Shown here: one piece after another, positions 33,338 to 60,235 of the stretch
Numbering within the stretch: the stretch's first letter is position 1
Layout: each line of letters opens with the position of its first letter
IMG/VR virus record: IMGVR_UViG_3300046092_000062
Location: 256,768 to 320,767 of that record
Length of the DNA: 64,000 nucleotides
Reading direction: 5' to 3' (one strand)
Notes under the pieces: generated by a model
What the model was told of the DNA's origin: nothing
Databases searched by the model: none
What the model saw: the letters and a program-made list of their open reading frames with translations, nothing else
Program-made: the position numbers and the translations under genes

Positions 33338-33347
33338 AATGGTCAAC

Positions 33348-34673: not shown

Positions 34674-34674
34674 G

Positions 34675-45122: not shown

Positions 45123-45541
45123 TGCTTCATGTACTTTGCAACTACTTCTGCTAGTTGCTTATGTGTATCATCAAACCAAGTGCTAACATGGTAATCGCAG
45201 TTGATGGGTTTTTCAAACAGTTTATTAGTGTCTTCAAATCTACCTTCATTGATAGTGTCCATCCACACTGTGAACTCAGCATCAAATTCTGCTCTTGCTG
45301 CTTCTGTGGGGCATACAAAATCTGCTACTGCAATCTTACCAGCTTTAACTACACCGTCGGCTAGATACTTCATACGCATTGCCTGCCTCATACGACCTTC
45401 TGGTGTAAAGTCCCAGTCATTGTATTCCTTGCGTACTGCATCTGCGTTAAGCCATACTCCGCCGATTAGATCTGCAAATGGTTTAGCCAATGTGCTCTTG
45501 CCACTTCCCGGCAATCCAAATATCAGTATCTTCTTAGTCAT
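45119..45541 (-). CDS. cysC: adenylylsulfate (APS) kinase-like protein
   Basis: GLPGSGKSTLA, LNADAVR, DFTPEGRMRQ, DFVCP, FEKP. Confidence 0.75.
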   Translation of the reverse strand: MTKKILIFGLPGSGKSTLAKPFADLIGGVWLNADAVRKEYNDWDFTPEGRMRQAMRMKYLADGVVKAGKIAVADFVCPTEAARAEFDAEFTVWMDTINEGRFEDTNKLFEKPINCDYHVSTWFDDTHKQLAEVVAKYMKH

Positions 45542-45897
45542 TTTAGACCCATTTCTAATCTAATTTTTGTAGCACTTATGTTATGAATTTGTTCATCAAA
45601 AGTTTCTTTCTCTATTGAGTACCCAACCTCTCGTCCGTATGTGATATTTGTTATATTCGGAACTACTAAGATTTCATATTGACCTGCATACATTGGATCT
45701 AAGTCTTTCTGTATATTAGCAATCACTTCGTTGAGTGTAAATGGATTGGACTCATTCCATCCCTGACAGTCCCTAATCATAATACACACCTGTCCAGTTT
45801 TAGCAATAGCACGTTCGAACAATGCACGGTGGCCGGCATGCCAGGGCTGCCATCTTCCTAGCATTTGTACCGTCGGTTTCTTCCAATCAAATTTCAT
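45538..45897 (-). CDS. HxGH nucleotidyltransferase (cytidylyltransferase-like)
   Basis: GRWQPWHAGH, ISATKIR. Confidence 0.8.
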   Translation of the reverse strand: MKFDWKKPTVQMLGRWQPWHAGHRALFERAIAKTGQVCIMIRDCQGWNESNPFTLNEVIANIQKDLDPMYAGQYEILVVPNITNITYGREVGYSIEKETFDEQIHNISATKIRLEMGLK

Positions 45898-46097
45898 TCT
45901 CTTCCCCAAATAATTTTGTTCCAGACACGTTCGTGTATAAAATATAACACGGTGTTAATTACTAATTGTGTTGATGCTATTGCTCCGGCTATTTGAAGGT
46001 TGCCGAGTACCAAATACGATATCAATAAAGTTGATGCCGTACCGGTTACTCTCCAACTAATAGTCTTAGCAATGCTTCTACCAGTCGCTTCAGTCAT
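45894..46097 (-). CDS. DUF2061-like small membrane protein
   Basis: RSIAKTISWR...LYFIHERVW. Confidence 0.75.
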   Translation of the reverse strand: MTEATGRSIAKTISWRVTGTASTLLISYLVLGNLQIAGAIASTQLVINTVLYFIHERVWNKIIWGRE

Positions 46098-47581
46098 GAA
46101 CAGACCTTTACGCCATACAACTGTTCGAATCTATCTGCATCTGCACGATCGTTTACCATTGGTTCCCCACGTATGTTAAGACTTGTGTTTAACAACATAG
46201 GGCACCCTGTCATCACGTACCATTTTTCGAGCAGCTCTCTAATGCCGCTTCCATCTTTTGGCACTGTCTGTACACGACTAGTTCCGTCAGCGTGAACGAT
46301 AGCAGGAAATAGGTCAGGAACCCTACACCTAGCGACTGACTGCATATACCTACTATGCTCGAACCCACGAGGCATATCAAAGTAAGTATCAGCCAGTTCT
46401 TCCAAAATAACTGGCGCAAAGGGTCTGAATTGTTGTCTACGTTTGATGTCATTTACTTTCTCCTTAATCTCGCTGCCTCTAGGATCTGCAAGCAGGCTTC
46501 TGTTTCCAAGTGCTCTTGGACCGAACTCGGCTCTCCCGGAAGCCACTCCCACAATTTGCCGAGTAAGTAACTCGTCCAGAACGTCGTTAACAGGGTAAGG
46601 GCCAGGAATATTATGCCCGAGATAAGCGTCATGCCAGTTAAGGGCACCCCCATAAGCCAGAGCGGCAGCACCAAGGCTACTGCCAGCATCCCCAGGGTTA
46701 GGCATAATCCATATATTCTCAAAGTAGTTTCCTATACGTGCATTTGCTGCACAGTTTAAAGCGCATCCGCCCATGTATACAAGGTTGTCACTCCACTTAA
46801 ATTGCTTTGCGCGAAGCATGACGTTGAGAATCAAATCCTCAGCCAGGTCCTGTGCTGCGGCCGCAATATCCATGTCACTAAAGTTAGACAGGTACTTTGT
46901 ACTCATGCCCATGTGCAAGTTTTCTTTAAACTTGATTTCCCATTCGTCGGATACCAAGTCTAGCTTCATTATGTCTTTAGCATATCCGCCACCATAAGCA
47001 GCCATGCCCATTAGAATGTATTCTTCGTCTAGTGGGCGTAGGCCAACGAGCTTAGTAGCTCCAGTATAAAAGAGTCCGATTGAATGTGGGTAATTCTGTT
47101 GCCAAAGTCGCTTATAAGTTGCTTTACCGTTGCTATCATATTCTGCTCCCCAAATTGAGATAGTTTCAAATTCACCAATGGCGTCAATAACAACTACTGT
47201 GGCCTTGTTGAAACTGCTGGTCTGAAATCCCGCTGCTGCATGGCTCAGATGATGATTGTAGTTCTTATAGTACTTTAGATCCCACCACTTGGCATGCCCA
47301 ATCTGCTTATGCACAAGTTTCTTAACGCTGAGCTTATCCCACTCGAATCCTTGTCCTGCATAAGCCTGACGCAACTGCTTATATAGAGGACGTTCGTAAT
47401 AAGCCACGGTCTGGATGGGATTGTATTCCTCGAGCTTACGAATAAGTGGACTACAGAAATTAGCATCTGACTTTGACTTACTATATCTTTCGGAATGACT
47501 GGCGAAAAGGATGTTCCCATCTTCGTCTAATACTGTTGCGGCTGCGTCATGATAACCAGCCGAGATGCCTAATATGTTCAT
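46094..47581 (-). CDS. NodU/CmcH-family carbamoyltransferase
   Basis: YHDAAA, SERYSK, HHLSHAA, DAIGE, GGCALN, GDAG, EFGPRALGNRS, FRPFAP, HADGTSRVQT, LNTSLN. Confidence 0.95.
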   Translation of the reverse strand: MNILGISAGYHDAAATVLDEDGNILFASHSERYSKSKSDANFCSPLIRKLEEYNPIQTVAYYERPLYKQLRQAYAGQGFEWDKLSVKKLVHKQIGHAKWWDLKYYKNYNHHLSHAAAGFQTSSFNKATVVVIDAIGEFETISIWGAEYDSNGKATYKRLWQQNYPHSIGLFYTGATKLVGLRPLDEEYILMGMAAYGGGYAKDIMKLDLVSDEWEIKFKENLHMGMSTKYLSNFSDMDIAAAAQDLAEDLILNVMLRAKQFKWSDNLVYMGGCALNCAANARIGNYFENIWIMPNPGDAGSSLGAAALAYGGALNWHDAYLGHNIPGPYPVNDVLDELLTRQIVGVASGRAEFGPRALGNRSLLADPRGSEIKEKVNDIKRRQQFRPFAPVILEELADTYFDMPRGFEHSRYMQSVARCRVPDLFPAIVHADGTSRVQTVPKDGSGIRELLEKWYVMTGCPMLLNTSLNIRGEPMVNDRADADRFEQLYGVKVCS

Positions 47582-48092
47582 TTATTTTATCTGCTATTCT
47601 TTGATGACCTAGCTCCAGCGGATGCCCGCCAGGTCCTTTAGGGCAATCGCCCATCCACTCTACCATACTGCCCGGTATCCAATTGCCTACATTGCAATTA
47701 GGAACATCAAACGTTCTTACGAATACATAAGGTATATTGCGATCACGCAAGTACGCATCTAACATTAACACTTGCGTAAAAAACTTTGTCTTGGCCCATT
47801 CTTCGTCCCAATCTAAAAATACATGATCGCAAATTGATCCATACTTTCTATGACTACTTGGAGTAAGGTGTTGTCCGTTTACTTCTATCCTATTAGGAGT
47901 AGTCCATGCAATAATTGCATAGGTTGGGTAATGATTCTCCACTGCGACTACAGTAGACTTAATGATTGCATCATTACTGTAGCCTGGCTGAGCTCTATTC
48001 ATAACAGGGCAGTCTAATAACTCTGGCCACGGTTTTTGGCCGTTTGTTAGTTCTTCCCCGTATGTAAAGCTGTCGCCGTTAACAAACATCAT
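47547..48092 (-). CDS. SGNH/GDSL-like hydrolase
   Basis: FVNGDSFTYG, GYSNDAI, GHPLELGH. Confidence 0.75.
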   Translation of the reverse strand: MMFVNGDSFTYGEELTNGQKPWPELLDCPVMNRAQPGYSNDAIIKSTVVAVENHYPTYAIIAWTTPNRIEVNGQHLTPSSHRKYGSICDHVFLDWDEEWAKTKFFTQVLMLDAYLRDRNIPYVFVRTFDVPNCNVGNWIPGSMVEWMGDCPKGPGGHPLELGHQRIADKINEHIRHLGWLS

Positions 48093-48190
48093 TTGTATAT
48101 AAATGGATCGCGCTTACGCAATTCCTTGAGTTTCTTGCGGTAACGAATTTCCAGACGGATTCTGTTGTACAGACTTTTTAACCAGTTCAT
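48089..48190 (-). CDS. 33-aa basic peptide (not in ORF track)
   Basis: MNWLKSLYNRIRLEIRYRKKLKELRKRDPFIYK; TGA overlaps next ATG. Confidence 0.55.
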   Translation of the reverse strand: MNWLKSLYNRIRLEIRYRKKLKELRKRDPFIYK

Positions 48191-48938
48191 TGAATTGTTC
48201 TTTCATTAATAGGGCTGCGTCACTGTGCGCTTGCTCTAGCGGATGTGTGGTACCTATAGGGTATTTATTTTCCTTTGCCCACTGATAGAAACCTCTTGGG
48301 TTGCATGTTTCATTGAACTTAGTTCCTGCAGGAAACCAATACCATTTCAACAAATCAATTTGGTTTACAAGACTCATAATAGTAGGATCGTTTTGGCTAA
48401 CGGTGTAGTTATAGATCAAGCTATTGTCTGCACAAGTAAACATGTAGGGAATGCCTTTTACTTGAAGGTAATTTTGAAGGTACACAATTTCTTTAAGACT
48501 TGAATACACTTCCCAATATTCCGTAGAACCCACGTGTGCGTAGAACGTTCTTGCAAAATCTGCAACACCAGTCGTCTGCGCTCTGCCGATGGTCTCCAGC
48601 TGGGCATCCAGAATAGCCTTATCCTTAGTAACGAATTCTTTTTCAATTTCTCTTGCATCTTGTTTTATCGTCCACGAGTTAATGCTGTACCATGGACTTT
48701 TGCGCTGCTTTGTATCGTATGCAAATCTAAACTCGTAACGACCGGAAAATGTCCAGCTAACGATTACACCAGTTACCCCGCCTTGCTCGCAACGTTCAAT
48801 GGTGGTGCGGGCAATAGCATCGTTGCTATATCCCGGCCATGCAACGCACTCGTCTGCGCCTAACAATGCTGTAAAGGTATTGGCTGGGCTTGCTAGCTCA
48901 CTGCCATAAACAAAACTATCGCCTGCTGCTATAATCAT
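48114..48938 (-). CDS. SGNH/GDSL-like hydrolase
   Basis: AAGDSFVYG, GYSNDAI, THPLEQAH. Confidence 0.75.
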   Translation of the reverse strand: MIIAAGDSFVYGSELASPANTFTALLGADECVAWPGYSNDAIARTTIERCEQGGVTGVIVSWTFSGRYEFRFAYDTKQRKSPWYSINSWTIKQDAREIEKEFVTKDKAILDAQLETIGRAQTTGVADFARTFYAHVGSTEYWEVYSSLKEIVYLQNYLQVKGIPYMFTCADNSLIYNYTVSQNDPTIMSLVNQIDLLKWYWFPAGTKFNETCNPRGFYQWAKENKYPIGTTHPLEQAHSDAALLMKEQFNELVKKSVQQNPSGNSLPQETQGIA

Positions 48939-50019
48939 ATCCAGGCTTTAAACGGTCGATTTGTTGTTGGTAGTAGTCCGGGTCTGTCCAAGTGTAGGGA
49001 TATAGGGAGCGTAGTACATTCCCTTGCCCGTCATCTGTAGTGATCCCCTGTATGTCAAGGTATTTAGAGAGGATGGGCCATATGCTGGCGTAATCAGTTG
49101 TGCCAAAACTTTCTTGCAACGAAACTTGGCCCACTGGGTGGTATCCATAGTTATATTGCGTGTCATGTAAGTCGAATCCGTTGCGGACAAGCCAATCCCT
49201 AAATCCTGTAAGCTCTCGGGTGTGCCAAGGATGCGGACCATTAAAGCATACATCTTGTGCCCATTCGATGTCAAACTCCCCGCTATAGTAACGTAGGTGA
49301 GTAATAGCATCACAAGTGGCCTGGTCAATATCGACTCCCGCCTCATCTCTATAGACTTCAAACAGTGTTTTGCCAATTTGTGTCCAATGTAGGTATACTT
49401 CCCCGAAGCGTCTGTCATATCGAGATTCGTCAAATGTAGTTCTATGTACTGATGGGAATTCATGGCGTGGGCAATTTAAGAATGTTGTAATTTGACTAGG
49501 ACGAATCCACTCAGGCTGTGTTGCTTTCTTGCGCTGACTTAACATTAAACTTTCTGCTTCGTGGCACAGCAAGTTTAGTTGACGGATAGCAAACTTTGTG
49601 GTGTAGTCTGCCCGCTTGTAATATTCACTAAGTCCGTTAACAGTGCCTTGCAGTATCTCAAAATGATTGTGCAACTTGTTCATCAAGTCTTGGTTGGGAT
49701 CGAGTGTAATTGGATCACGTAATGTGGTATGAGTATACAGTTCTTCGATATGATAGTCGTCAAAGAAACTGTTAATCTCATTTACTGCCCAAAACAGTTC
49801 TTGGCAAATAAAACGCAAGTCACGTTGGCTATCCGGAAATCCCAAAAAGCAAAAGTTCTTTTCAAGATAGAGATTACGCTGCACTACATCCTGCAATGCT
49901 TCGAACCACAGTTTACCCATTGACGTATCATTCACGTTAATGTAGTAATCTAACGTGTCACTTTTGTCTAACGGGTTTTGTAGTGTTACTGTTACTTTGT
50001 TCAAATTGAATCCCACCAT
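48916..50019 (-). CDS. hypothetical protein in radical SAM cluster
   Basis: 367 aa; His-containing helices LNKLHNHFE, LNLLCHEAE. Confidence 0.75.
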   Translation of the reverse strand: MVGFNLNKVTVTLQNPLDKSDTLDYYINVNDTSMGKLWFEALQDVVQRNLYLEKNFCFLGFPDSQRDLRFICQELFWAVNEINSFFDDYHIEELYTHTTLRDPITLDPNQDLMNKLHNHFEILQGTVNGLSEYYKRADYTTKFAIRQLNLLCHEAESLMLSQRKKATQPEWIRPSQITTFLNCPRHEFPSVHRTTFDESRYDRRFGEVYLHWTQIGKTLFEVYRDEAGVDIDQATCDAITHLRYYSGEFDIEWAQDVCFNGPHPWHTRELTGFRDWLVRNGFDLHDTQYNYGYHPVGQVSLQESFGTTDYASIWPILSKYLDIQGITTDDGQGNVLRSLYPYTWTDPDYYQQQIDRLKPGYDYSSRR

Positions 50020-51296
50020 TCTAACACCGCAGGTCTGCCTGCAAGTATATCTCTCATAGTATACTGGTCATTGCGAATTTGTTCAAGTTTTTCGATACGA
50101 GCTTTGCCACGCTTTAGTCCATCTTGATATTCGTTGGGCCATTGTTCAGCAAATGTGGGTCTAGTTTTCAGCTGGACTAAGATATCCTTTAACGGATCGT
50201 TACTGATTAAGTTAAGTTGTTCGTCTATCCATTCATCAAGCAGATGTCTAGGTAGGGCTAAAGGTGACATAACTATGTCCGGACTGAAACTAAAAATTAC
50301 TTTGGCAAGGATGTCGACGTTGAGTTCTTGGGACAGTCGTTGCATGGATTCGAGCTCGAACATACCTGGCAAAGTGAGTGTAAAGTCGATTCGCATTTGG
50401 CGACGGTGACGTTGGATCGCAATTCCTGCACGGAAGTTTTCAAGCCATCTAGTGTAATCAAGGCCTGTTCTAATGTATTCGCCAATTTTTCCCGTGCCGT
50501 CAAGACTTGCACATATTTGCCAATCCCGTATATTAGCAAGGATATCAGTATAGAGGTTAACACCCCGATAAGTAGTTCGAGAAAGATTTGTATTATATCG
50601 TGCATAGACATTTTGGCCATCTCCTAGTTCTATGATGCGTTGCATATAGCGCCAGTGTTGTTCATACATGAGTGGTTCTCCGCCAACCCAGTACACTTCT
50701 TCAACACGGTGTTCTTCGACGGCTTGACTAAACTCTGCCTCAATTTCTCTATCTTGAAATTGCTCAATTTGTTTTTTGACTTCAGGTTGCATCCAAGTAT
50801 TCTTTGGATTGGACCAATCTATCATGTTATGCTGTCTTTGCTCTGTCTCCCAACTACTACTTAACATGTCACCACACATACGGCACTTGAAATTACATAG
50901 ATTGGTAAATCTGTAATCCCAACTAACAGGTTTCATTGTAGTGTAGCCTGTTTCGTCCGTTGCATTTATTACAACATTGTAATCGTACTTATGTCCAAAC
51001 ATGTGATCAAAATAGCTGCGGTAAACGGAGGTATTCAACAGTTTATCATTACATACTTCACACTCTGGTAGGGTTTCCCCAGCAATCATGCGACGACGGA
51101 CCGACCGCATGTGCTCGCTATTCCAGTGTTCTTCCAGAGTTATCGGTATATAACGTCCTGTACCCGCCGAAACGTCGATATACTGTTGAAAATTTTGTGC
51201 AGGTTCGCGACTAGCGCAACACATTCTGCGTTCTGTTTGTGGGCTTAGATACGTATGCACCCAAGGTGCAAGGCACATAGTAGCAGGTTTATTCAT
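50001..51296 (-). CDS. radical SAM protein with N-terminal SPASM/twitch-like Cys domain
   Basis: CLAPW..MCC..CEVC; CNFKCRMC; GGEPL; YNTN; SLDG. Confidence 0.9.
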   Translation of the reverse strand: MNKPATMCLAPWVHTYLSPQTERRMCCASREPAQNFQQYIDVSAGTGRYIPITLEEHWNSEHMRSVRRRMIAGETLPECEVCNDKLLNTSVYRSYFDHMFGHKYDYNVVINATDETGYTTMKPVSWDYRFTNLCNFKCRMCGDMLSSSWETEQRQHNMIDWSNPKNTWMQPEVKKQIEQFQDREIEAEFSQAVEEHRVEEVYWVGGEPLMYEQHWRYMQRIIELGDGQNVYARYNTNLSRTTYRGVNLYTDILANIRDWQICASLDGTGKIGEYIRTGLDYTRWLENFRAGIAIQRHRRQMRIDFTLTLPGMFELESMQRLSQELNVDILAKVIFSFSPDIVMSPLALPRHLLDEWIDEQLNLISNDPLKDILVQLKTRPTFAEQWPNEYQDGLKRGKARIEKLEQIRNDQYTMRDILAGRPAVLEWWDSI

Positions 51297-52497
51297 ACCC
51301 CATTGCCTTTGCGATTTCTAAGTGAGTTGTTCTAAAGTCTTGCTTGCGGTAGTCATCTGTGCGCTGCATTTGACGCAGGAATTCTGCACCATCGCTACCT
51401 TGTCCGTTTTGTATAAACTTAACTACGTTGTCGACTTCTTGCTGATAACGACCCGGCCATGCAGTTGATTGCAGTTTAGCAATAACCAGCTCTTGTGCTG
51501 CGGGCGTCATGTATTGTACGCTCATCTGGTTAGGGCTATGTAGCATGTTGAAGTGGATGCTGTTAAACATCTTAGGTGCTGCCCAAGCTAGCAATTCATC
51601 AATGTAATAAACGTTTTGAATGTTGATTGTAAAGCATAGCTGAGTTGTAATATTCTTCTGCACTCGACGCAATTGATGTGCTGCATCAACTACTTCATTT
51701 GCTCTATCCCACTTAGCACCGTAGCGCTCATACTCAAAACGATCGCCTACGTTATCGACGCTAAATGCAATATCTACACGACCAAACTCTTTCCAAAGAT
51801 CCACTGCATCCTCAGGCCATTGGGTAGCATTTGTATTGTAGTGAATATCGATACCTTTTGCAAAACCGTTGTCTGCTGCATAACGCAATAGATCAAAGTG
51901 CTCTTGAATTAACCACGGCTCCCCACCAGTAAACTCAAAGTATTTGATATTGGGTAGCATCTCTCTGAGGTTGTCCCAGAACGTTGTGGTCTTACGTGGC
52001 CATGCGCCCTTCTTTAACCACTGGTATGCAATGTGTTGTTTCTTATCTGCACCTGCAGGCATGTAGTTCATTTCTTCTTCTGCCCACTTGCTGCTACTCC
52101 AGCTTCCGCAAATGCGACATTTTAAGTTACAAATGTTGCCTAGCTTTAAGTCAATGAACCACAGCTGATCCGGAGTATCATTGGCCCAGTCTACAAGCGG
52201 GTACAATTCCTTTAGTCGAATCTGGCTGTTGATACGCTTGCTGTTGCGACCAATTTCTTCTTCTTTCCAACAGTCACTACATGTCGCAGGCTTTTCACCT
52301 GCACGGAATTGTCTACGCAGGTTCTGCATGTATTCGCTCTTGTACACTGTTGCCAAGTCGGTTTCGTTAAGATCGTACTTGACACCGTTTTCGTCTGTGA
52401 TTTGCTCTTGTGCAAGACAACATGGGCGTGTGGTTCCCATTGGGCTAGTTTCAATACTAACCCACGGTAGCATACAAATAGTCTTAGGTAGGTGCAT
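51289..52497 (-). CDS. radical SAM protein with N-terminal SPASM/twitch-like Cys domain
   Basis: CMLPW..PCC..CSDC; CNLKCRIC; GGEP; YNTN. Confidence 0.9.
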   Translation of the reverse strand: MHLPKTICMLPWVSIETSPMGTTRPCCLAQEQITDENGVKYDLNETDLATVYKSEYMQNLRRQFRAGEKPATCSDCWKEEEIGRNSKRINSQIRLKELYPLVDWANDTPDQLWFIDLKLGNICNLKCRICGSWSSSKWAEEEMNYMPAGADKKQHIAYQWLKKGAWPRKTTTFWDNLREMLPNIKYFEFTGGEPWLIQEHFDLLRYAADNGFAKGIDIHYNTNATQWPEDAVDLWKEFGRVDIAFSVDNVGDRFEYERYGAKWDRANEVVDAAHQLRRVQKNITTQLCFTINIQNVYYIDELLAWAAPKMFNSIHFNMLHSPNQMSVQYMTPAAQELVIAKLQSTAWPGRYQQEVDNVVKFIQNGQGSDGAEFLRQMQRTDDYRKQDFRTTHLEIAKAMGYE

Positions 52498-53800
52498 ATT
52501 GTTTCAGCTCGTGTAATTCAGGAAACACATCAAAGAAGTTTTCTTTGCGTACATTGTCAATTAAATCATTGTTCTTAAAGAACTCTGGTAACTGGTCAGT
52601 GCTGTCATTTGCCATCATGAAGTTGATAATGCCTTCGTAACCGCTAGTGGCTCTACTTAGTTTGTCTTGTGGGCGTAGCCAATCTAAATGGCGCTCAATT
52701 TTTGCTTTAGCCCTATCTTTAAGCACCTGCGGTAACACGTCAACACGATACCGGTGCGGATGCTGTAGGATGTTAATGTTCCAATCCATTGGGCGCACTA
52801 AACCTAGCTCGCTCCAGTCACGGTGAAAGTCTGCGATATGCAAAACGTTCATCATGCTTACTGTGCTGCTAACATAGAAGTCTACGTTAGGACATACCTC
52901 AATCATACGCTTACGGTTGTCAACTGTTTGTTGCCAATCTTGTCCCTTACGTATGTACTCGCCACGTTCAAAGCTGCCATCTAAACTAGCGCCAACGCTC
53001 ACACAGTCAAACAGTTTCCACATTTCAAATACGTCACGACCTTTAAACTTCATTTCGCTAAAGTTAGTGTTATAGATCAGTCGTACATGGAACATCTTGC
53101 GCTTAACCAGTTCGTCAAGCACCTTCCAATGTTCTTCCATAATAAGTGGTTCACCGCCTGCCCAGTAGATTTGTTCAAGGTGCGGAATATGCTCTTGCAT
53201 CTGCTCCCACATATCGCCTTTGTCTTTACCAGCATACATCACTTGTGGGTGTTTTGGATCCCATCCAGCTGCTTTTTCATCTCTATACCAACTACTTGAA
53301 AAGATGCTACCGCAGGTACGGCAGCTAAAGTTGCAAAGGTTGCTAAAGCGAATATCGTAGTAGCGCAATTTAAAGTCATCATATTGTCCATCCTCTTTTG
53401 TATCATCAACTAATCCAATGTGGTGCCCAAAGTTCTTGTTAGCACTTTCACGCATACTAAACAGTTTACTATCTTCTTGCTCATAGCACTTGGTGCATTC
53501 CTTGCAAGGTTGATTTAGTAACATACGTTTACGCATGTCCTTCATCGGAGCATCGTTCCAAATCTCACGCATGGTTTGCGTTTTAAGATTACCAATTGGG
53601 TGCTCTGGCTCGCTTAGGCAGCAAGGATATGCACGACCATCGGGGAAGGCGTGCATGTGAATCCAAGGAATCATACAGAACTGATCGCTCTTGATTAGTC
53701 GATCAAGTTGATCTGTTCGTAGGTCTTCTTCTTTGATATAAACTGGCTTACGGGCGCCGTAGTTGTAATCTTTATAGTAGTCGTTTAGGTTATCTGCCAT
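52484..53800 (-). CDS. radical SAM protein with N-terminal SPASM/twitch-like Cys domain
   Basis: CMIPW..PCC..IGNL..CTKC; CNFSCRTC; GGEPL. Confidence 0.9.
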   Translation of the reverse strand: MADNLNDYYKDYNYGARKPVYIKEEDLRTDQLDRLIKSDQFCMIPWIHMHAFPDGRAYPCCLSEPEHPIGNLKTQTMREIWNDAPMKDMRKRMLLNQPCKECTKCYEQEDSKLFSMRESANKNFGHHIGLVDDTKEDGQYDDFKLRYYDIRFSNLCNFSCRTCGSIFSSSWYRDEKAAGWDPKHPQVMYAGKDKGDMWEQMQEHIPHLEQIYWAGGEPLIMEEHWKVLDELVKRKMFHVRLIYNTNFSEMKFKGRDVFEMWKLFDCVSVGASLDGSFERGEYIRKGQDWQQTVDNRKRMIEVCPNVDFYVSSTVSMMNVLHIADFHRDWSELGLVRPMDWNINILQHPHRYRVDVLPQVLKDRAKAKIERHLDWLRPQDKLSRATSGYEGIINFMMANDSTDQLPEFFKNNDLIDNVRKENFFDVFPELHELKQYAPT

Positions 53801-53834
53801 TATAGTGAATTATAGTGAATTATAGTTGATTATA
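53801..53834. repeat. 10-bp tandem repeat at gene junction
   Basis: TATAGTGAAT x2 + TATAGTTGAT + TATA. Confidence 0.7.
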
Positions 53835-55169
53835 CCAAGCTGCTAGCTCTGGGAATGTGTTGCAGAAGTCTTTGCCCCTGCGTTGATCGTACTGTGCAAA
53901 GAAGTTTTTAAAGTCCTGTTGTAACACTGATTGCTCTGCTGCGCCTGCATGTGGAGTTATCATCACATCAAGGTAATCAATTAGTCGTTTCAATTGATCA
54001 ATTTCAAATCCATGGCACACGTTGCTATCTTTGTGTGCTTGATAGAAGTTGCTGAGATTTGTTCTGTATTGGGTGCGTAGTTCGTCGGGTAATACCAACG
54101 GGCTTTGAAAACTTGGGAATCGTAAAATATTTAGCGAAAAGTTAATCGAGTCTTTACCATACTTACGCTTCCATGCCACTACCATCTCAAGGAAGCGGTC
54201 TAAGCTGCTAAGACATAGTGCGTTGACAGTACACATCACATGCAAACCACGGAACTTGCCGCTATCTAACAAACGCTCTACGTTGTTAGTCCAGTCCTCA
54301 AAGTTAATACCATCACGGATGTACTCAGACTGCAAGCCAATGGATTCGTTGCTGGTATACAAGTCAACTTCAACGCCATCAATGGCGCCAAGCAAGCGAT
54401 CGATATCTACTTCCGTGCCTAAGTTACTGTTAATAGCAAGGCGTGTCTTGCTCTTGCCTTTGTTGGTCTTAAACCATTCAATCAGCTTCCACGTTTCGCC
54501 CGACATCAATGGCTCTCCGCCGGTGATGCGTAGTTCCTTTAGTGTTCTGTGGAGATCGCTTTCCCACCACTTGTGAAAGGCGTCCACATAAGGATTAGCT
54601 TGACCGAAGCGATACAGTTGAGAGCTATCATGAGCATGAGTAAAGTGATTTCGTCCGTCACTAACCAATCCGTTATAGGCCCCGTTATTCCTAATGTCTT
54701 TAACCCAAGTGCTGCTAAAAGCAGGATTGCAGTAACTACATGCAAACTGACAAGTGCGGTCGAAAGCAATTTCCAAAGTTTGCAAATCCACATCGGTGCT
54801 GGCTGGGGTACTAAAAGCATAATTTAAATCCTTATCGTCATATATAACTGTTTTGTAAACACGGTCAGACACAGAGTCTTTACCCATGTCTTCAATCTTC
54901 CAGCAGTATTCACAACCTGCAGGACGTTCTCCCTTTTGCATCTGCTCACGTTCCATTTTCTTTTTAGAAGTGTTGTGCAGTGCTTTGGGGTTTGATGATA
55001 GCTCACTCACATCAATTGCATGTGGCAACGGATGATGGCAGCTAGTGGTTTGACCACTACCTAACCAGATAGTGGCGTTGTACCATTTTGCTCCGCAGAA
55101 GCTTTCGCTCTTAATGTCAATCACTCTGCGTTTGTATTCTAGGTCTGTTTCGTTATTGATTCTGGGCAT
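53820..55169 (-). CDS. radical SAM protein with N-terminal SPASM/twitch-like Cys domain
   Basis: CGAKW..SCHHP..CEYCW; CQFACSYC; TGGEPL. Confidence 0.9.
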   Translation of the reverse strand: MPRINNETDLEYKRRVIDIKSESFCGAKWYNATIWLGSGQTTSCHHPLPHAIDVSELSSNPKALHNTSKKKMEREQMQKGERPAGCEYCWKIEDMGKDSVSDRVYKTVIYDDKDLNYAFSTPASTDVDLQTLEIAFDRTCQFACSYCNPAFSSTWVKDIRNNGAYNGLVSDGRNHFTHAHDSSQLYRFGQANPYVDAFHKWWESDLHRTLKELRITGGEPLMSGETWKLIEWFKTNKGKSKTRLAINSNLGTEVDIDRLLGAIDGVEVDLYTSNESIGLQSEYIRDGINFEDWTNNVERLLDSGKFRGLHVMCTVNALCLSSLDRFLEMVVAWKRKYGKDSINFSLNILRFPSFQSPLVLPDELRTQYRTNLSNFYQAHKDSNVCHGFEIDQLKRLIDYLDVMITPHAGAAEQSVLQQDFKNFFAQYDQRRGKDFCNTFPELAAWYNQL

Positions 55170-56544
55170 GGTACCTACATTCGTCCCAGAACTCTTTCAT
55201 CTCTGGGAATGTTGTTTTAAAGTCTGTTCCGCGTCTTGCATCGTGATGATTAAAGAAGCGATAAAAGTCAGCACGTTGCAGTGTAACATATTCAGGATCA
55301 AGAGTGCTACCTTCTTTCATCCATTCTATGTCACGAGCCATACGTTGAATCTCGTAATCCTTAAAACCTTGAAATGGTTTGTCTGCTGTTTCTTTGTTAG
55401 CTTCCATCCATTTTAGAATGTCTTCCATACGCTTAACATAGACCCAAGGCATGATCTGAATACTTTGCCAGCTAGGGGTGCGTAGCAAGGGAGTGTCAAA
55501 CCAAACACGTTGATAAGTTGTGCTGTGCTGTTTTCGTAAATCCAGAATCCAATCTAGCTGCGCCTGTAAACCAACAATGCTTAAATTATTCATTGTGATA
55601 ATGAATGTGAGACTGTTGCGGTGAGGAATATCAGTTAGGTAACGCTGCACGTTGTTATGAACACGAGATGCTATCATGCCATGTCGAATGTACTCAGCCT
55701 GTTCCATATTGCCTGAGTCCAAACTAACATACTGCATAAAATGCTCAATTTGAGTATTGCACAAACGTTTTACATAATCAAGATACTGATCCATTAACTT
55801 AGGATCTACGCTGAAGTTACTGGTCACATTCAAATGTAGGTCTGGCTTGGGCATAGCCAGCACATAGTCAAACACCTTGTAAGTGTTCTTGTCCATCAGC
55901 GGCTCGCCACCTGTCATGCGGAAATGTTTAAGTTTAGAGTACAGTTCAGGCCACCACTCCCAAAACGCATCAACGTAGGGATTAGACTCTCTGGCAGGTA
56001 TTGGTCGTCTAGCATTAGTGAAGTGAGCCGGATCATTGTGAGGAACAGAGGTAGGAAAAGCACCGTGTCGTTGTACTTCATCAGCCCAACTGCTAGAAAA
56101 CTGAGGGGAACAATAACTACACTTAAGGTTACAAGCGTGGTTAAAATTAACTTCAACATAACTTGGAATTGTATCTTCTTGTCCTGTAGAATTTTTGATC
56201 TCGTCATAGTGTTCTGCTGCCCAAGGCTCTCCGCTTCTGTAATGTCTGTCACTTAGTTGATCATGTGCTTCAATGTTCCAGCAATAGCTACACTCACTGG
56301 GCTTTTCATCCTTTAGCATAATCACACGCTGTTGCTTTTTATGCTCGGTGTTATGTAATGCGCTGGGATTGAGTTTGATTGCTTCTGGATCAATCTTGTG
56401 CAATGGCGGATGGTAGCAACTGTTGTTCAATCCAGTTGGTAAGTGCAGGCTTACTTGTTTCCATTTAGCCAGACAGAGTGCAGGACCTAACTTGGCCTTC
56501 ATCTCATCTGCTGCACTCATAAAGTCGCTCTTACCTGTTGTCAT
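55153..56544 (-). CDS. radical SAM protein with N-terminal SPASM/twitch-like Cys domain
   Basis: CLAKW..SCYHP..CSYCW; CNLKCSYC; TGGEPL. Confidence 0.9.
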   Translation of the reverse strand: MTTGKSDFMSAADEMKAKLGPALCLAKWKQVSLHLPTGLNNSCYHPPLHKIDPEAIKLNPSALHNTEHKKQQRVIMLKDEKPSECSYCWNIEAHDQLSDRHYRSGEPWAAEHYDEIKNSTGQEDTIPSYVEVNFNHACNLKCSYCSPQFSSSWADEVQRHGAFPTSVPHNDPAHFTNARRPIPARESNPYVDAFWEWWPELYSKLKHFRMTGGEPLMDKNTYKVFDYVLAMPKPDLHLNVTSNFSVDPKLMDQYLDYVKRLCNTQIEHFMQYVSLDSGNMEQAEYIRHGMIASRVHNNVQRYLTDIPHRNSLTFIITMNNLSIVGLQAQLDWILDLRKQHSTTYQRVWFDTPLLRTPSWQSIQIMPWVYVKRMEDILKWMEANKETADKPFQGFKDYEIQRMARDIEWMKEGSTLDPEYVTLQRADFYRFFNHHDARRGTDFKTTFPEMKEFWDECRYHAQNQ

Positions 56545-57097
56545 ATGAAAATTTCTCTAACATGTTTTTAACTAATGTGTAATTGGTTACTATCTCTTGG
56601 GGAGGAATTGGGTATTGGTTCTGCTTAAACTTAGTTGTCTTGCGGGACTTGACCATATCTTCGTAATAGACAATTTCATTTGGCGTGATTGCAAAGTCTA
56701 AATATTGTTCCATTAGAAATTGCTCTATGTCGTCTTTAGTTGACTCCCACGGTAACAAGTCTTTGTAGTCATTCCAGTCCGGCGAATGTTTGCTTATGCT
56801 AGCCTGCGTCTGTGCTCTAAATACGCACCAACTTAGATACTGTGCTACTTTGTCTCTGCGGCGTAAATTAACCACATAGTAATCACTTGTCCAACTAAGG
56901 TCTACTGCTAGCGCAATCTTTGCCCAGTTTTGCACAATGCTGCAATACACAAACTTGTCGGCTATATCAGGCAGTTCAGTAACTTCACCTAGTATAACTT
57001 TTTCAGGCAACTGCGACTCGTTATAAAGCATGTCGCAGGTCATGTGACTGCCACTACGAGCAGTGCCAATGACTATCATGCCTTTTATTCTCTGCAC
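56531..57097 (-). CDS. Stf0-like sulfotransferase
   Basis: IGTARSGSHM, LRRRDKVAQYLS, YYED. Confidence 0.65.
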   Translation of the reverse strand: MQRIKGMIVIGTARSGSHMTCDMLYNESQLPEKVILGEVTELPDIADKFVYCSIVQNWAKIALAVDLSWTSDYYVVNLRRRDKVAQYLSWCVFRAQTQASISKHSPDWNDYKDLLPWESTKDDIEQFLMEQYLDFAITPNEIVYYEDMVKSRKTTKFKQNQYPIPPQEIVTNYTLVKNMLEKFSYDNR

Positions 57098-57984
57098 ATG
57101 ATTCCCTTGTTCTTAAACTGACTATTATAGTGATGTTTGAAAAATTTACTTTGGTATTCGTCCAAGTCAATAATAGGTAAGTCCAAGCATCTTGTTAATT
57201 CAACGCTGTATAAGTTTACAAAGTCAATAACCTCAAACTTGTGTACAGTGTTATCCCAATAGTCTTTTAACTTTTGGAAGTCTTGGACTTCTGTGTAGTC
57301 CCAGTCTGAGAGCATGGTGTTGTAAGTGCCTTGGCGGGCGCCTGCCATTGCCCACAGTCCATTTTCCACATCTGATCCCACGTTGTGCCAGATAGATAAG
57401 TTGTCAAGGTTTCTCCTAACAACGCTATTTTTGAAATCAGATAAACTTGGTTTACGTCCACGGTCCAAACACATTTTAACGCCTTCCCTAAATCCTGCAC
57501 GCCAAGCCTGGAACGCAGTGGCATTCGGATACGTGGTACTGTAGCAGTCCGCCATAGCCCAGTATTGAGGATGGAAACAGAATTCGACTTGTGTCTCATG
57601 ACTACCATCAGTGGCTTCGTGTGTGCGCATAGATTCGATAAAGCTCCTAGTCCAGCACGAAATCCCACCATTGCCATATTGTAACCCATTTATAATATTC
57701 CTCGCTCTCCATCTAAATACACAATCACGATTAGTATCATCAATACTAAGTTGCTGGTTAAAGAAAGCAGGATCGGGGAGGTTGTCTCCGTCAATAAGAA
57801 TGAAGCGGTCCGTGTCACTAGCTCTTGCCGCTGCTTTGTGTGCAGCATCGCTCCCGCTAACGCCATCCACCCGCTTGGCCCAAGGAACGACATTCTGTAT
57901 CTGAATCCAGAACTCTTCTTTTTTAGGTTCATCATATGTAAGGAAGATGCAGTCCAGGTCTGCAACGTCAATTATTTCTGTCAT
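57085..57984 (-). CDS. GT-A-like glycosyltransferase
   Basis: DCIFLTYDEP, AAHKAAARAS, FILIDGDN (DxD). Confidence 0.7.
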   Translation of the reverse strand: MTEIIDVADLDCIFLTYDEPKKEEFWIQIQNVVPWAKRVDGVSGSDAAHKAAARASDTDRFILIDGDNLPDPAFFNQQLSIDDTNRDCVFRWRARNIINGLQYGNGGISCWTRSFIESMRTHEATDGSHETQVEFCFHPQYWAMADCYSTTYPNATAFQAWRAGFREGVKMCLDRGRKPSLSDFKNSVVRRNLDNLSIWHNVGSDVENGLWAMAGARQGTYNTMLSDWDYTEVQDFQKLKDYWDNTVHKFEVIDFVNLYSVELTRCLDLPIIDLDEYQSKFFKHHYNSQFKNKGIMCRE

Positions 57985-58318
57985 AGTATTCGATGTTTGT
58001 GTACTCTTCGTCTTGTTCTATTAGCAGTGCAGGATGGTTCTTAACCACTGCGTATCCACTTGTTGATTTACGTAACTGCAACCACATTGTGCCAGCATCG
58101 ATTGTGATTAACTGCCCATTTACAACTTTTAGGTTATGCACTGTTGCTCTATTGTATACTGATTTTGGTATAGTGATATAATTAGTACCCTTGCTATCAC
58201 CCATGCCCATGTACAGGGCATTACCATGCGCATCGTAGTATAAACGATATTCAATGGTTTGCACAACCTCTGGTTCAATCAAACCAAATGCTTTAATTAA
58301 CTCCGGCAGCTCGTTCAT
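57968..58318 (-). CDS. hypothetical protein
   Basis: in operon; YRLYYD. Confidence 0.65.
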   Translation of the reverse strand: MNELPELIKAFGLIEPEVVQTIEYRLYYDAHGNALYMGMGDSKGTNYITIPKSVYNRATVHNLKVVNGQLITIDAGTMWLQLRKSTSGYAVVKNHPALLIEQDEEYTNIEYYDRNN

Positions 58319-59135
58319 AATCTCTAATTATCTCATCCGTAATAAAGTCTTTGTAATGGTAGTGGACCGGAAATAGTTGCAGCACATTATTGATTCTAAT
58401 ATCAGGTGCATCTATTACTACGTTAACCGCCCTATGGAATTCAGTATCCGAAGGCCATCCATTAATACCGGGCTTCATGTGTACAAAACTTGTTCCAACA
58501 CCAGGTAGAGTAGTTAACTCTCTACCAACAATGTTAGCGGCCACTGCATATACAAAATCTGTAGTGGCTTGAGTAGTTGCTGTTCGCTTAAACTCTGAGC
58601 CGACCTGTTCCCACGTAAGGAACAGTTCTCTTGCTACTTTAAAGAATTCTAATGCTGTTTTACTGTAACGAAAATACATTAGTCCGTTATATACATCGGG
58701 CAACTCATTGTCTACAAACGATGCCCGATAAGGACTTGGCACTTGATCGCCGTGATAGTTTCTGCATCCTAGTCCTAATACTACATCTCGCATACGGTAC
58801 AAATCCCACCGCTGTGTCATGTCCCGTGTAACTAAGATATCTGCTTCCAACTTGATTGTTTCTTTAAAAGGAGTAAGCCAAAATACTTGCCATTCGTTTG
58901 CTAACTTCCAATCAGTGCCAGTTGAATAATCATGTGTTAATTCAATTACATAATCAAACACCTTGCGATGTTGTTCTGTTACTTGTGCCATGGTAGCTGC
59001 GTCCACAATAACTGCGTACCTGGCACCCGGTGTTACTGCCTTAATACTCAATGCTTGCACGTAGGCCATTCGCAGATAATCTGCTTTGCCGTTTTGTGCA
59101 ATAGTTAAAAATCCCTGTTGTTCTTTATGCTGCAC
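58293..59135 (-). CDS. GT8-like glycosyltransferase
   Basis: YLRMAYVQALSIK, TPFKETIKLEAD, YNGLMYF, FVHMK; GTG 59135 chosen over 59168. Confidence 0.65.
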   Translation of the reverse strand: MQHKEQQGFLTIAQNGKADYLRMAYVQALSIKAVTPGARYAVIVDAATMAQVTEQHRKVFDYVIELTHDYSTGTDWKLANEWQVFWLTPFKETIKLEADILVTRDMTQRWDLYRMRDVVLGLGCRNYHGDQVPSPYRASFVDNELPDVYNGLMYFRYSKTALEFFKVARELFLTWEQVGSEFKRTATTQATTDFVYAVAANIVGRELTTLPGVGTSFVHMKPGINGWPSDTEFHRAVNVVIDAPDIRINNVLQLFPVHYHYKDFITDEIIRDYERAAGVN

Positions 59136-59952
59136 AGTGCTGGTCCACGAATGTTTTAAAGTTGTCACTAAGTAAATATCCTTTACTCAGGACATGTAAA
59201 TTGCCCACTGGAATAACATAGCCTTCCTTAGTATCCTTAACGTGCAGTAAAGATCCAACCCTTGCAATACTTTGTAACTGTCCAGTGGCAGTTAATAGGG
59301 GCTGTGGTAACTGCGTTTGTTTATCAGTCTGGTAACCGTTAACCAAATAATCTGCAATTGCAAACGCATAATCGTTGCGATAATTAGTTGCAGGGATATT
59401 GTATAACATCTTATAGTAATCGTAATTGCGCTGTACTCGTCCTACTAAATCAAATAGCATTTCTGCCTTGGCTGTTTTGCGAAACAAGATCACTGTGGCC
59501 CAGATAAATGGCAGGCTGTACATGCCCATAGTATCTGTAAATTCGTCTTGACCTAGATTGATATTACGATGTGGAATTAGGTAGTCCCATTCTGTATCAA
59601 AGTAAGTTAATAGACTGTTATCTAACACAAGATAGTCGGTGTCCATAAGAATAGTTTCATCGTATGGACTAAGCTCGTAGGCCATATAACGACCAAAGTT
59701 TCGCCACTGTACACGTTGACCTAACTCTGTGCTGTAACGTGTGTTGCCACCTTGTGATTCAATGCGTACTATGTTGTCTACATCAAACTCAACTACTTCA
59801 TCTAAGCCCGTTACTAAGGTAACCGGCAAGTTGAGGTTATGCTTAATCAAGCGAATGGTGTTACTAGTTAGCTTAACGTAATCAGTGTCTGCATTGTTAA
59901 ATGCAAACAATAACACGCCCTTAGATTTTTCTAATCTTTTTAAGTTCTGCAT
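59125..59952 (-). CDS. GT8-like glycosyltransferase
   Basis: SPYDETILMDTD (DxD), WATVILF, YRNDYAF. Confidence 0.7.
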   Translation of the reverse strand: MQNLKRLEKSKGVLLFAFNNADTDYVKLTSNTIRLIKHNLNLPVTLVTGLDEVVEFDVDNIVRIESQGGNTRYSTELGQRVQWRNFGRYMAYELSPYDETILMDTDYLVLDNSLLTYFDTEWDYLIPHRNINLGQDEFTDTMGMYSLPFIWATVILFRKTAKAEMLFDLVGRVQRNYDYYKMLYNIPATNYRNDYAFAIADYLVNGYQTDKQTQLPQPLLTATGQLQSIARVGSLLHVKDTKEGYVIPVGNLHVLSKGYLLSDNFKTFVDQHCAA

Positions 59953-60235
59953 GTTGTTGGTGCCATTCATTCATAACTCGACTGTAATGTTGTTGTGCCT
60001 GCACTAAGAATACCTGTCGGTCCACTTGAATTGGATTCTCGTAGACATCTTCGATATAGAGTTCGTCAACTGGCCATTCCTTTACAAAGGAGATCAAGCC
60101 CGGAGTGATTTTAAATAAACCGCCATTGTGTGCAAAATGCAAATCGGTTTGGATGCGCTCTCTTAGTAGGCGCTTGTTCTTTTGATAGTCAGTGGCCAAT
60201 CGAATTTGTTCCACAATCGTAGGTATGTTACTCAT
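59921..60235 (-). CDS. hypothetical protein
   Basis: first gene after promoter 60242-60270. Confidence 0.7.
   Translation of the reverse strand: MSNIPTIVEQIRLATDYQKNKRLLRERIQTDLHFAHNGGLFKITPGLISFVKEWPVDELYIEDVYENPIQVDRQVFLVQAQQHYSRVMNEWHQQHAELKKIRKI

What the first reader, a model, noticed from the sequence alone, without database searches (positions are those of the whole stretch)
50001..56544. Array of five radical SAM enzymes with the auxiliary Cys domain placed N-terminally
Seen: five consecutive 402-463-aa genes, each with C-x3-W...C(C/H/Y)...CxxC before the CxxxCxxC core. They form two subtypes: CxxPW/CC (three genes) and CxAKW/SC(H/Y)HP (two genes). Known: SPASM/twitch domains normally follow the radical SAM core and occur in peptide, protein and sugar-modifying enzymes. 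Inference: a phage-expanded, permuted family performing sequential radical chemistry on an unknown substrate.
Basis: partly seen in the sequence, partly recalled or inferred. Interest (0 to 1): 0.75.

Follow-up and report, generated by a model that had tools for sequence, protein, structure and literature searches.

The report
Phage array of N-terminal-twitch radical SAM enzymes
A freshwater jumbo phage carries five old, strongly conserved paralogues of an already catalogued but functionally unstudied radical SAM family whose extra iron-sulfur domain sits at the N-terminus, embedded in a sugar-tailoring gene block, so the architecture is not new but the chemistry and the substrate are unknown.

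Summary
Five co-directional, mostly overlapping genes (50001-56544, minus strand) each carry four N-terminal Cys ahead of CxxxCxxC, in two subtypes as described. The architecture is already catalogued: all five score 286-412 bits against NCBIfam NF033640, "N_Twi_rSAM" (cut-off 170). I found no paper or solved structure for this family.

The family is large (about 7,500 50%-identity clusters at E<=1e-30). It also occurs in bacteria, often in multiple copies in Bdellovibrionota. The five genes are not recent duplicates. They are 19-31% identical to each other, yet each has its own orthologues (50-98%) in the same order in 60+ related phage contigs. Natural fusions join neighbours (R1+R2, R3+R4, R4+R5).

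The array lies in a conserved block. Its clearer members are a GT-A-like glycosyltransferase, a carbamoyltransferase, DUF6071 (GDS-motif) proteins, an APS-kinase-like gene and a DegT/dehydratase/GNAT sugar set. A conserved 33-aa peptide ends in an invariant DPFIYK.

Best reading (about 0.4): consecutive radical tailoring of a sugar or glycoconjugate, with the four-Cys cluster acting as an electron conduit. A peptide substrate is the main rival. I rate it a new member of a known kind, of moderate interest.

The parts
55153..56544 (-). R1: N_Twi_rSAM paralogue, subtype B (CLAKW...SCYHP...CSYCW; CNLKCSYC)
   Evidence: It scores 300.7 bits against NF033640. Its orthologue clade has 99* support. 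Median identity is 66% in 42 distant related loci.
53820..55169 (-). R2: N_Twi_rSAM paralogue, subtype B
   Evidence: It scores 295.7 bits against NF033640. It is 51% identical to gene 202 of the cultured Ralstonia phage RsoM2USA, and the two group together at 100*.
52484..53800 (-). R3: N_Twi_rSAM paralogue, subtype A (CMIPW...CC...CKEC)
   Evidence: It scores 412.4 bits against NF033640. Pfam SPASM matches residues 42-105. The AF2 model has pLDDT 94.7 and pTM 0.91.
51289..52497 (-). R4: N_Twi_rSAM paralogue, subtype A; the least constant member of the array
   Evidence: It scores 335.6 bits against NF033640. It is present in 28 of 42 distant loci and is sometimes replaced by another paralogue.
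50001..51296 (-). R5: N_Twi_rSAM paralogue, subtype A; the most conserved member
   Evidence: It scores 285.8 bits against NF033640. Median identity is 74% in distant loci.
57085..57984 (-). GT299: GT-A-fold glycosyltransferase-like protein, the first conserved gene upstream of R1 (an optional small gene, ST188, lies between them in this window)
   Evidence: The AF2 model has pLDDT 88.8. All top Foldseek PDB matches are GT-A glycosyltransferases (RmlT, TarP, HAS, PBCV-1 A64R, SunS), with E 2e-4 and probability 0.99. A DGD motif at residues 65-67 is invariant. Median identity is 68%.
56531..57097 (-). ST188: small protein between GT299 and R1, present only in the closest relatives
   Evidence: It has no family match. 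Its P-loop-like N-terminus was noted by eye only.
48916..50019 (-). U367: conserved unknown protein directly after R5
   Evidence: Synteny is. Pfam, NCBIfam, PHROGs and the Atlas give no match.
48114..48938 (-). S274: DUF6071-like protein with a GDS motif; SGNH-hydrolase-like by eye only
   Evidence: The Pfam DUF6071 match is weak. RsoM2USA genes 201 and 203 score above the DUF6071 cut-off.
48089..48190 (-). pep33: conserved 33-aa basic peptide with an invariant C-terminal DPFIYK
   Evidence: Its sequences are. Substitutions follow a coding pattern: 158 changes at third codon positions against 61 and 38 at the first and second, and 121 synonymous against 57 non-synonymous codon changes. A homologue exists in RsoM2USA.
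47547..48092 (-). S181: DUF6071-like protein whose start codon overlaps the pep33 stop codon
46094..47581 (-). Carbamoyltransferase (NodU/CmcH/TobZ type)
   Evidence: Pfam Carbam_trans_N and Carbam_trans_C match at E 5e-34 and 5e-47. It lies next to pep33 in 60+ loci.
45119..46097 (-). APS-kinase-like protein, cytidylyltransferase-like protein and DUF2061 small membrane protein
   Evidence: Pfam matches are.
58293..59970 (-). GT291 and GT281: conserved unknown proteins with DxD-like motifs upstream of GT299
   Evidence: Synteny is. The only match is to the unannotated phrog_1903. The glycosyltransferase reading rests on motifs seen by eye only.
38681..41557 (.). NDP-sugar set: 4,6-dehydratase/epimerase (+), DegT aminotransferase (+) and GNAT acetyltransferase (-)
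   Evidence: Pfam matches are. The same genes flank the module in L011, L013, L076 and L078.

Best explanation
The five genes are paralogous radical SAM enzymes of the catalogued but uncharacterised N_Twi_rSAM family (NF033640). Each has three parts: an N-terminal twitch-like domain whose four conserved Cys should hold a fully ligated auxiliary [4Fe-4S] cluster, a partial TIM-barrel core with CxxxCxxC, GGE and SAM-binding motifs, and a C-terminal helical cap. They are the slowly evolving core of a roughly 25-kb tailoring module in a lineage of freshwater T4-like jumbo phages.

Proposed mechanism (inferred). Each paralogue reductively cleaves SAM, and the 5'-deoxyadenosyl radical abstracts one specific hydrogen. 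The four-Cys auxiliary cluster then takes up the electron of the substrate radical, as it does in BtrN/anSME-type dehydrogenation or cross-linking. The paralogues act one after another, possibly as a physical assembly, on one sugar, NDP-sugar or glycoconjugate. That substrate would be built by the flanking dehydratase/DegT/GNAT genes, transferred by the GT-A-like enzyme, and further decorated by the carbamoyltransferase and perhaps the DUF6071 and APS-kinase-like genes.

Graded confidence: they are radical SAM enzymes with an auxiliary cluster, about 0.9. They work as one pathway or set, about 0.7. The substrate is a carbohydrate or glycoconjugate, about 0.4.
For: Family membership is shown. 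The four N-terminal Cys are 97-100% conserved in 513 unique family members, matching the conservation of CxxxCxxC, while the fifth Cys is specific to one subtype. The R3 model is confident, with three domains.

That the genes work as a set is supported by several results. Gene order R1-R2-R3-(R4)-R5 is fixed in 60+ contigs. Each of the five orthologue groups is monophyletic. The genes are packed as an operon. Natural fusions R1+R2, R3+R4 and R4+R5 occur in the same order as the array. GT299, R1-R5, pep33 and the carbamoyltransferase are 58-82% conserved, whereas most flanking genes are 29-51%.

The carbohydrate context rests on GT299 being GT-A-like with an invariant DGD motif, on the carbamoyltransferase, DegT, epimerase/dehydratase and GNAT genes, and on the APS-kinase-like gene. 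The best core matches include enzymes that act on nucleotide-linked substrates: BlsE is the top VIA hit (Z 12.8) and second in the PDB sequence search, and viperin and MoaA also appear.
Against: No member of the family has a known substrate. Fold and sequence matches are flat and cover only the core. Peptide maturases (CteB, SkfB, anSME, SuiB, MftC) score as well as BlsE and viperin. Most neighbouring genes give no family match, so calling several of them sugar enzymes rests on motifs seen by eye. Bacterial homologues sit in varied, mostly non-glycan contexts: PqqD with an HprK-like protein, a methyltransferase with TPR proteins, photolyase and carotenoid genes, or further radical SAM genes. 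In RsoM2USA a lone R2 orthologue sits with DUF6071 genes, pep33 and the carbamoyltransferase, with no detected GT299 homologue nearby. Five or more radical steps on one sugar would be unprecedented.
Confidence: 0.4

Rival explanations
1. The enzymes are peptide or protein maturases. The array would install cross-links, epimerisations or oxidations either on the conserved 33-aa peptide (used as a RiPP-like precursor or as a scaffold, then glycosylated and carbamoylated, by analogy with mycofactocin or PQQ) or on a virion or tail-fibre protein encoded next to the module.
For: From general knowledge, most characterised SPASM/twitch enzymes act on peptides. CteB, SkfB, anSME, SuiB, AlbA, MftC and PqqE are among the best core matches. 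pep33 is a real coding gene with an invariant DPFIYK C-terminus, conserved as far as RsoM2USA, where it lies two genes downstream of the R2 orthologue. A Cohaesibacter homologue lies beside a stand-alone PqqD/RRE gene. The module abuts genes resembling tail fibre or virion proteins.
Against: Pfam detects no RRE/PqqD domain in any of the five proteins. pep33 always lies with the carbamoyltransferase and DUF6071 genes. The array occurs without them within 10 kb in L075/L081 and in L076/L078, although those contigs are fragments. pep33 has no conserved Cys, Ser or Thr. The family-wide invariant residues look like cofactor-binding rather than peptide-binding residues.
Confidence: 0.25
2. The enzymes modify nucleic acids or nucleotides, for example by DNA hypermodification, by a tRNA or nucleotide-pool modification, or by radical DNA repair.
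For: The module lies beside thymidylate synthase and DHFR, and in relatives beside dCMP deaminase. Weak core similarity to viperin, MoaA and QueE recurs. Two bacterial homologues lie next to photolyase genes.
Against: The genome has a single thymidylate-synthase homologue, and it scores as a true ThyA, so there is no sign of a hydroxymethylase pathway. The viperin family scores are 15-26 bits against a cut-off of 180. No DNA-binding or DNA-transferase domains were found.
Confidence: 0.1
3. The paralogues are redundant or decaying copies, or each works independently on an unrelated substrate, so the array is merely a gene-family cluster.
For: Copy number varies between relatives from 4 to 8. 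R4 is dispensable in many loci. Three further paralogues are scattered elsewhere in the genome.
Against: All cofactor motifs are intact in all five proteins. Each orthologue group is conserved more strongly than most neighbouring genes. Gene order is fixed, and neighbouring genes are found fused.
Confidence: 0.1

Closest known systems
NCBIfam NF033640, N_Twi_rSAM ('twitch domain-containing radical SAM protein')
   Same: All five proteins match the model end to end at 286-412 bits against a cut-off of 170. They share the N-terminal four-Cys domain, the CxxxCxxC-SSxW motif, and the GGEP and EYIR motifs.
   Different: Nothing structural differs. The family itself has no assigned function, and I found no paper on it. 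The new element is the conserved array of five to seven genes in a phage.
BtrN (twitch radical SAM 2-deoxy-scyllo-inosamine dehydrogenase; comparison drawn from general knowledge)
   Same: Both have one auxiliary [4Fe-4S] cluster bound by four Cys next to a radical SAM core. BtrN has a carbohydrate-like substrate and works in a pathway with a DegT-type aminotransferase. It is the model for the proposed role of the auxiliary cluster as an electron sink.
   Different: The twitch domain of BtrN is C-terminal. BtrN was not among the listed fold or sequence matches, so no specific relationship is shown.
SPASM/twitch peptide maturases (anSME, CteB, SkfB, SuiB, AlbA, MftC, PqqE)
   Same: The cores are similar (VIA Z 9-12, Foldseek E about 1e-5) and the auxiliary-cluster domain is homologous (PF13186).
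   Different: In these enzymes the auxiliary domain follows the core, and they have seven Cys and two clusters (SPASM) and/or an N-terminal RRE. Here the domain precedes the core, there are four to five Cys, and there is no RRE. TM-scores are below 0.4 and the matches cover only residues about 121-404.
BlsE, viperin and MoaA (radical SAM enzymes acting on nucleoside- or nucleotide-linked substrates)
   Same: They are among the best matches to the core: BlsE Z 12.8, viperin Z 11.8, MoaA Z 11.4, with weak HMM hits as well.
   Different: None has an N-terminal twitch domain, and viperin has no auxiliary cluster. Scores lie far below the family cut-offs.

Membership tests
NF033640 N_Twi_rSAM | Whole-protein HMM score at or above the curated cut-off of 170 bits | tested here: met
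   R1 scores 300.7, R2 295.7, R3 412.4, R4 335.6 and R5 285.8 bits, covering model positions about 1-398.
NF033640 N_Twi_rSAM | Radical SAM CxxxCxxC motif with GGE and the other SAM-binding motifs | tested here: met
   These residues are 100% conserved in 513 family members.
NF033640 N_Twi_rSAM | Twitch-like Cys domain lying N-terminal to the core | tested here: met
   C42, C61, C102 and C105 (R3 numbering) are present in all five proteins and are 97-100% conserved across the family. PF13186 matches the N-terminus of R3 and R4.
NF033640 N_Twi_rSAM | The N-terminal Cys actually bind an Fe-S cluster | not testable with these tools
   This needs anaerobic reconstitution, iron and sulfide counts, EPR or Moessbauer spectroscopy, and Cys variants.
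Canonical SPASM subfamily (PF13186/TIGR04085 type) | Seven-Cys motif for two auxiliary clusters, placed C-terminal to the core | tested here: not met
   There are only four to five Cys, all N-terminal. No conserved Cys cluster follows the core.
Viperin / pVip | Score above the family cut-off (NF038283 cut-off 180 bits) | tested here: not met
   Scores are 17-26 bits against NCBIfam and 22-31 bits, partial, against PADLOC.
RiPP radical SAM maturases that recognise their substrate through an RRE | An RRE/PqqD-like peptide-binding domain within the enzyme | tested here: not met
   Pfam finds no PqqD/RRE domain in any of the five proteins. The N-terminus is occupied by the twitch domain.
Anaerobic sulfatase-maturating enzyme (the 'AslB' label that JGI gives some homologues) | A match to an anSME equivalog model, and an associated sulfatase gene | tested here: not met
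   No anSME model appears among the NCBIfam hits. No sulfatase was found among the neighbours scanned. The label reflects only a generic COG.

The most novel reading that the evidence does not exclude
The module is a phage-encoded, multi-enzyme radical assembly line. Five to eight N-twitch radical SAM enzymes, sometimes fused, would build a heavily tailored molecule not yet seen in viruses. Two candidates are a peptide-derived, glycosylated and carbamoylated product made on the invariant DPFIYK tail of the 33-aa peptide (a viral counterpart of mycofactocin- or RiPP-type chemistry), and a radically rearranged sugar that decorates the virion or the host surface. Either outcome would give the first function to a family of more than 7,500 sequence clusters.
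Probability: 0.2. Interest if true: 0.85.

Novelty: new member of a known kind. Interest (0 to 1): 0.55.

Why it matters
N_Twi_rSAM is a very large family: about 7,500 50%-identity clusters at E<=1e-30. It has a permuted auxiliary-cluster domain, no characterised member and no solved structure. This phage lineage offers an unusually clean entry point. It has five co-conserved, ordered and sometimes fused paralogues, and a defined set of partner genes: a GT-A-like enzyme, a carbamoyltransferase, DUF6071 proteins and a 33-aa peptide. Cultured phages carry reduced versions, namely RsoM2USA (one R2 orthologue with pep33 and the carbamoyltransferase), Vibrio phage K566 (four copies) and KVP40 (three copies). 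Finding the substrate would annotate thousands of genes. It would also show what a jumbo phage gains from investing about 6.5 kb in oxygen-sensitive radical enzymes.

Tried and rejected
- **Megablast of the array against GenBank phages:** no match.
- **tblastn of R3 against phages:** only matches at 25% identity or less, in vibriophages and RsoM2USA. R2, by contrast, has a 51%-identical orthologue in RsoM2USA.
- **PHROGs:** only generic 'radical SAM domain' families for the array and nothing for the neighbours.
- **ESM Atlas for GT299 and U367:** only unnamed viral clusters, or nothing.
- **Profile A1 as a query for genome loci:** too divergent to use. Relatives cannot be drawn for a virus record.
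- **Fold searches with R3 (PDB by Foldseek and VIA-wide, AFDB Swiss-Prot):** only the common core matched, with no specific relative.
- **Complex prediction of R2 with pep33, plus two 4Fe-4S clusters and SAM:** no verdict (score 0.03). This counts neither for nor against binding.
- **T4 late-promoter motif and sigma-70 promoter/terminator scans:** at chance level.
- **PADLOC:** only weak, partial pVip hits.
- **Literature searches:** searches for the family name, for an N-terminal twitch or SPASM domain, and for radical SAM in jumbo phages found nothing on function. The RsoM2USA paper does not mention these genes.
- **DNA hypermodification through a second thymidylate-synthase homologue:** rejected, because the genome has only one copy and it is a true ThyA.
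- **A sulfotransferase role for ST188:** this was only an impression from the sequence, and no search supports it.
Full report
**What is there.** The window is the last 64 kb of a 320,767-bp IMG/VR virus record that is about 92% complete. It encodes a T4-type DNA polymerase, so it is a jumbo phage. It occurs in many freshwater and lake metagenomes.

Positions 50001-56544 hold five minus-strand genes: R1 (463 aa), R2 (449), R3 (438), R4 (402) and R5 (431). They are packed with 8-17-nt overlaps and one 19-nt gap. Each has a single CxxxCxxC preceded by four conserved Cys. R3, R4 and R5 read CxxPW...CC...CxxC. R1 and R2 read CxAKW...SC(Y/H)HP...CxYCW.

**What family it is.** All five proteins match NCBIfam NF033640 from end to end, at 286-412 bits against a curated cut-off of 170. 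That model is named N_Twi_rSAM, 'twitch domain-containing radical SAM protein'. Pfam SPASM (PF13186) matches the N-terminus of R3 (E 2.5e-13) and of R4, ahead of the Radical_SAM domain. The 'permuted' architecture is therefore real but already catalogued.

I found no paper on this family and no solved close relative. The best PDB sequence match is 37 bits, to the core only. A confident AF2 model of R3 (pLDDT 94.7, pTM 0.91) has three parts: an N-terminal Cys domain, a partial TIM barrel and a C-terminal helical cap. Foldseek and VIA-align match only the barrel, residues about 121-404, to a flat list of radical SAM enzymes with TM-scores below 0.4: BlsE (Z 12.8), SkfB, anSME, CteB, viperin, SuiB and MoaA. 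AFDB Swiss-Prot gives the same picture.

**The N-terminal Cys.** I aligned 513 unique family members from related phage contigs, bacterial genomes and metagenomic representatives to a family profile. C42, C61, C102 and C105 (R3 numbering) are 97-100% conserved, which equals the conservation of CxxxCxxC, GGE, N246, S272 and R284. The fifth Cys, C60, marks one subtype: it is Cys in 64% of members and Ser in 35%. Four strictly conserved Cys in a SPASM-homologous domain argue for a fully ligated auxiliary [4Fe-4S] cluster. Metal binding itself cannot be tested with these tools.

**Size and spread of the family.** A profile of the genome's eight paralogues finds 7,515 50%-identity clusters at E<=1e-30 and 13,042 at E<=1e-10 among 1.84 billion representatives. 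Cellular members lie mainly in Bdellovibrionota, often at 2-6 copies per locus and next to further radical SAM genes. They also occur in Hyphomicrobiales and Bacteroidota. Subtype B (the R1/R2 type) is mostly viral, with a few Bdellovibrionota examples. The family is thus neither phage-specific nor rare.

**The array is old and works as a unit.** The five proteins are only 19-31% identical to each other. Yet each has its own orthologues, at 50-98% identity, in 67 related IMG/VR loci, almost always in the order R1-R2-R3-(R4)-R5. Each orthologue group is one side of a branch in a 185-sequence tree, with supports of 99*, 98*, 77, 99* and 74.

R4 is missing or replaced in about a third of the distant loci, and extra paralogues are inserted in others, giving up to seven or eight copies. 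In 42 distant loci the median identities are GT299 68, R1 66, R2 68, R3 63, R5 74, pep33 82 and carbamoyltransferase 63. Most other genes of the block lie between 29 and 51. Many metagenomic proteins of 800-1,400 aa are natural fusions. Their halves type as R1+R2, R3+R4 or R4+R5, which is the order of neighbours in the array. Together these results support, but do not prove, a single pathway or a physical assembly.

**Context.** The conserved block reads: tail-fibre/virion-like genes - U331 - U109 - GT281 - GT291 - U116 - GT299 - [ST188] - R1...R5 - U367 - [S274] - pep33 - S181 - carbamoyltransferase - [APS-kinase-like, cytidylyltransferase-like, DUF2061] - U372 - U815 - GNAT - DegT - 4,6-dehydratase/epimerase - ThyA - DHFR.
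- GT299 is the first conserved gene upstream of R1. It folds confidently (pLDDT 88.8), and its PDB matches are all GT-A glycosyltransferases. It has an invariant DGD motif.
- S274 and S181 are DUF6071-like proteins with a GDS motif.
- The thymidylate synthase is a true ThyA and the only homologue in the genome, so a hydroxymethyl-pyrimidine route to DNA hypermodification is not indicated.

**The 33-aa peptide.** The ORF at 48089-48190 (minus strand) encodes MNWLKSLYNRIRLEIRYRKKLKELRKRDPFIYK. It is a real gene. Across nine orthologues, substitutions fall mainly on third codon positions (158 against 61 and 38), and synonymous codon changes outnumber non-synonymous ones 121 to 57. W3, E14, K19, K26 and the C-terminal DPFIYK are invariant.

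A homologue ending ...RKQDPFIYK exists in the cultured Ralstonia jumbo phage RsoM2USA. There the arrangement is DUF6071 (gene 203) - R2 orthologue (gene 202, 51% identity) - DUF6071 (201) - pep33 - S181-like (200) - carbamoyltransferase (199, 46%). pep33 always lies with the carbamoyltransferase and DUF6071 genes. The array is found without them within 10 kb in L075/L081 and L076/L078, although those contigs are fragments. pep33 is therefore a candidate substrate or scaffold for at least R2, but not clearly for the whole array.

**Mechanism.** By homology, these are SAM-cleaving radical enzymes with a second, fully Cys-ligated cluster. The rest is inferred. Each paralogue would abstract one specific hydrogen, and the auxiliary cluster would act as the electron conduit for oxidation or cross-linking, as in BtrN and anSME (general knowledge). 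The paralogues would act in turn.

On the substrate I favour a sugar, NDP-sugar or glycoconjugate, at about 0.4. The reasons are the glycosyltransferase, NDP-sugar and carbamoyltransferase context, and the fact that BlsE, viperin and MoaA are among the best core matches. The main rival is a peptide or protein substrate, either pep33 or a virion protein, at about 0.25. It is supported by the peptide bias of SPASM/twitch enzymes, by the PqqD neighbour in Cohaesibacter and by the R2-pep33 link in RsoM2USA. Nucleic-acid chemistry (about 0.1) and independent or redundant copies (about 0.1) are less likely.

**Expression.** A freshwater metatranscriptome library holds contigs of a 90-97%-identical relative across R5, R4, R2 and R1. 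This is compatible with transcription but does not prove it, because DNA can be carried over into such libraries.

**Verdict.** The architecture is a known, catalogued kind, so I rate this a new member of a known kind. The family's chemistry, the conserved multi-paralogue phage array and its partner genes are undescribed and can be tested experimentally in cultured relatives. Interest: 0.55.

Noticed in passing
window 48089-48190 (-); L167 10183-10275 (RsoM2USA): A 33-aa basic peptide with an invariant C-terminal DPFIYK is conserved from freshwater jumbo phages to Ralstonia phage RsoM2USA. It always lies directly upstream of a DUF6071-like gene and a carbamoyltransferase. In RsoM2USA it is not annotated.
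   Followed up: partly
window 48114-48190: The 3' end of the 274-aa DUF6071-like ORF overlaps the start of pep33 by 77 nt in another frame. The pep33 stop codon overlaps the start codon of the next gene (ATGA), which suggests translational coupling.
   Followed up: no
window 45119-46097 (-): An APS-kinase-like P-loop protein, a cytidylyltransferase-like protein and a DUF2061 membrane protein sit next to the carbamoyltransferase. A second DUF2061-like ORF lies beside another radical SAM gene of the same genome (L009 42-491, seen by eye only). This may be a sulfation or nucleotide-activation side branch.
   Followed up: partly
L082-L085 (genome contigs): Contigs filed in MAGs named Rickettsiales, Flavobacterium, Porticoccaceae and Haliscomenobacter carry arrays of four to five family members, including subtype B copies in L082 and L085. 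One of these contigs is 148 kb. They are probably phage contigs binned into bacterial MAGs, or they may hint at the host.
   Followed up: no
L164 (Cytophagales) and L170 (Bdellovibrionales): In two unrelated bacteria, N_Twi_rSAM genes lie next to a DNA photolyase. In L164 they also lie next to a MerR/B12-binding regulator and carotenoid genes. This looks like a light-responsive neighbourhood.
   Followed up: no
G000 C1 about 181272-183400 (L008): A scattered paralogue (322 aa) is followed by ORFs that look like AhpC peroxiredoxin and AhpD-type alkylhydroperoxidase. This rests on their N-terminal sequences, read by eye only.
   Followed up: no
window 31900-35729 (+): A MoxR-type AAA ATPase, a DUF2201 metallopeptidase/VWA protein and a Bax1-I (TMBIM/YccA-like) membrane protein are encoded together in the phage.
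   Followed up: no
window 44004-45122 (+): U372 is the only plus-strand gene inside the block. It has a TEK...P(I/V)V...G stretch reminiscent of fucosyltransferase motifs. No family search supports this.
   Followed up: no
P0123-P0159: Dozens of metagenomic proteins of 800-1,400 aa contain two or three complete N_Twi_rSAM units in one reading frame.
   Followed up: partly
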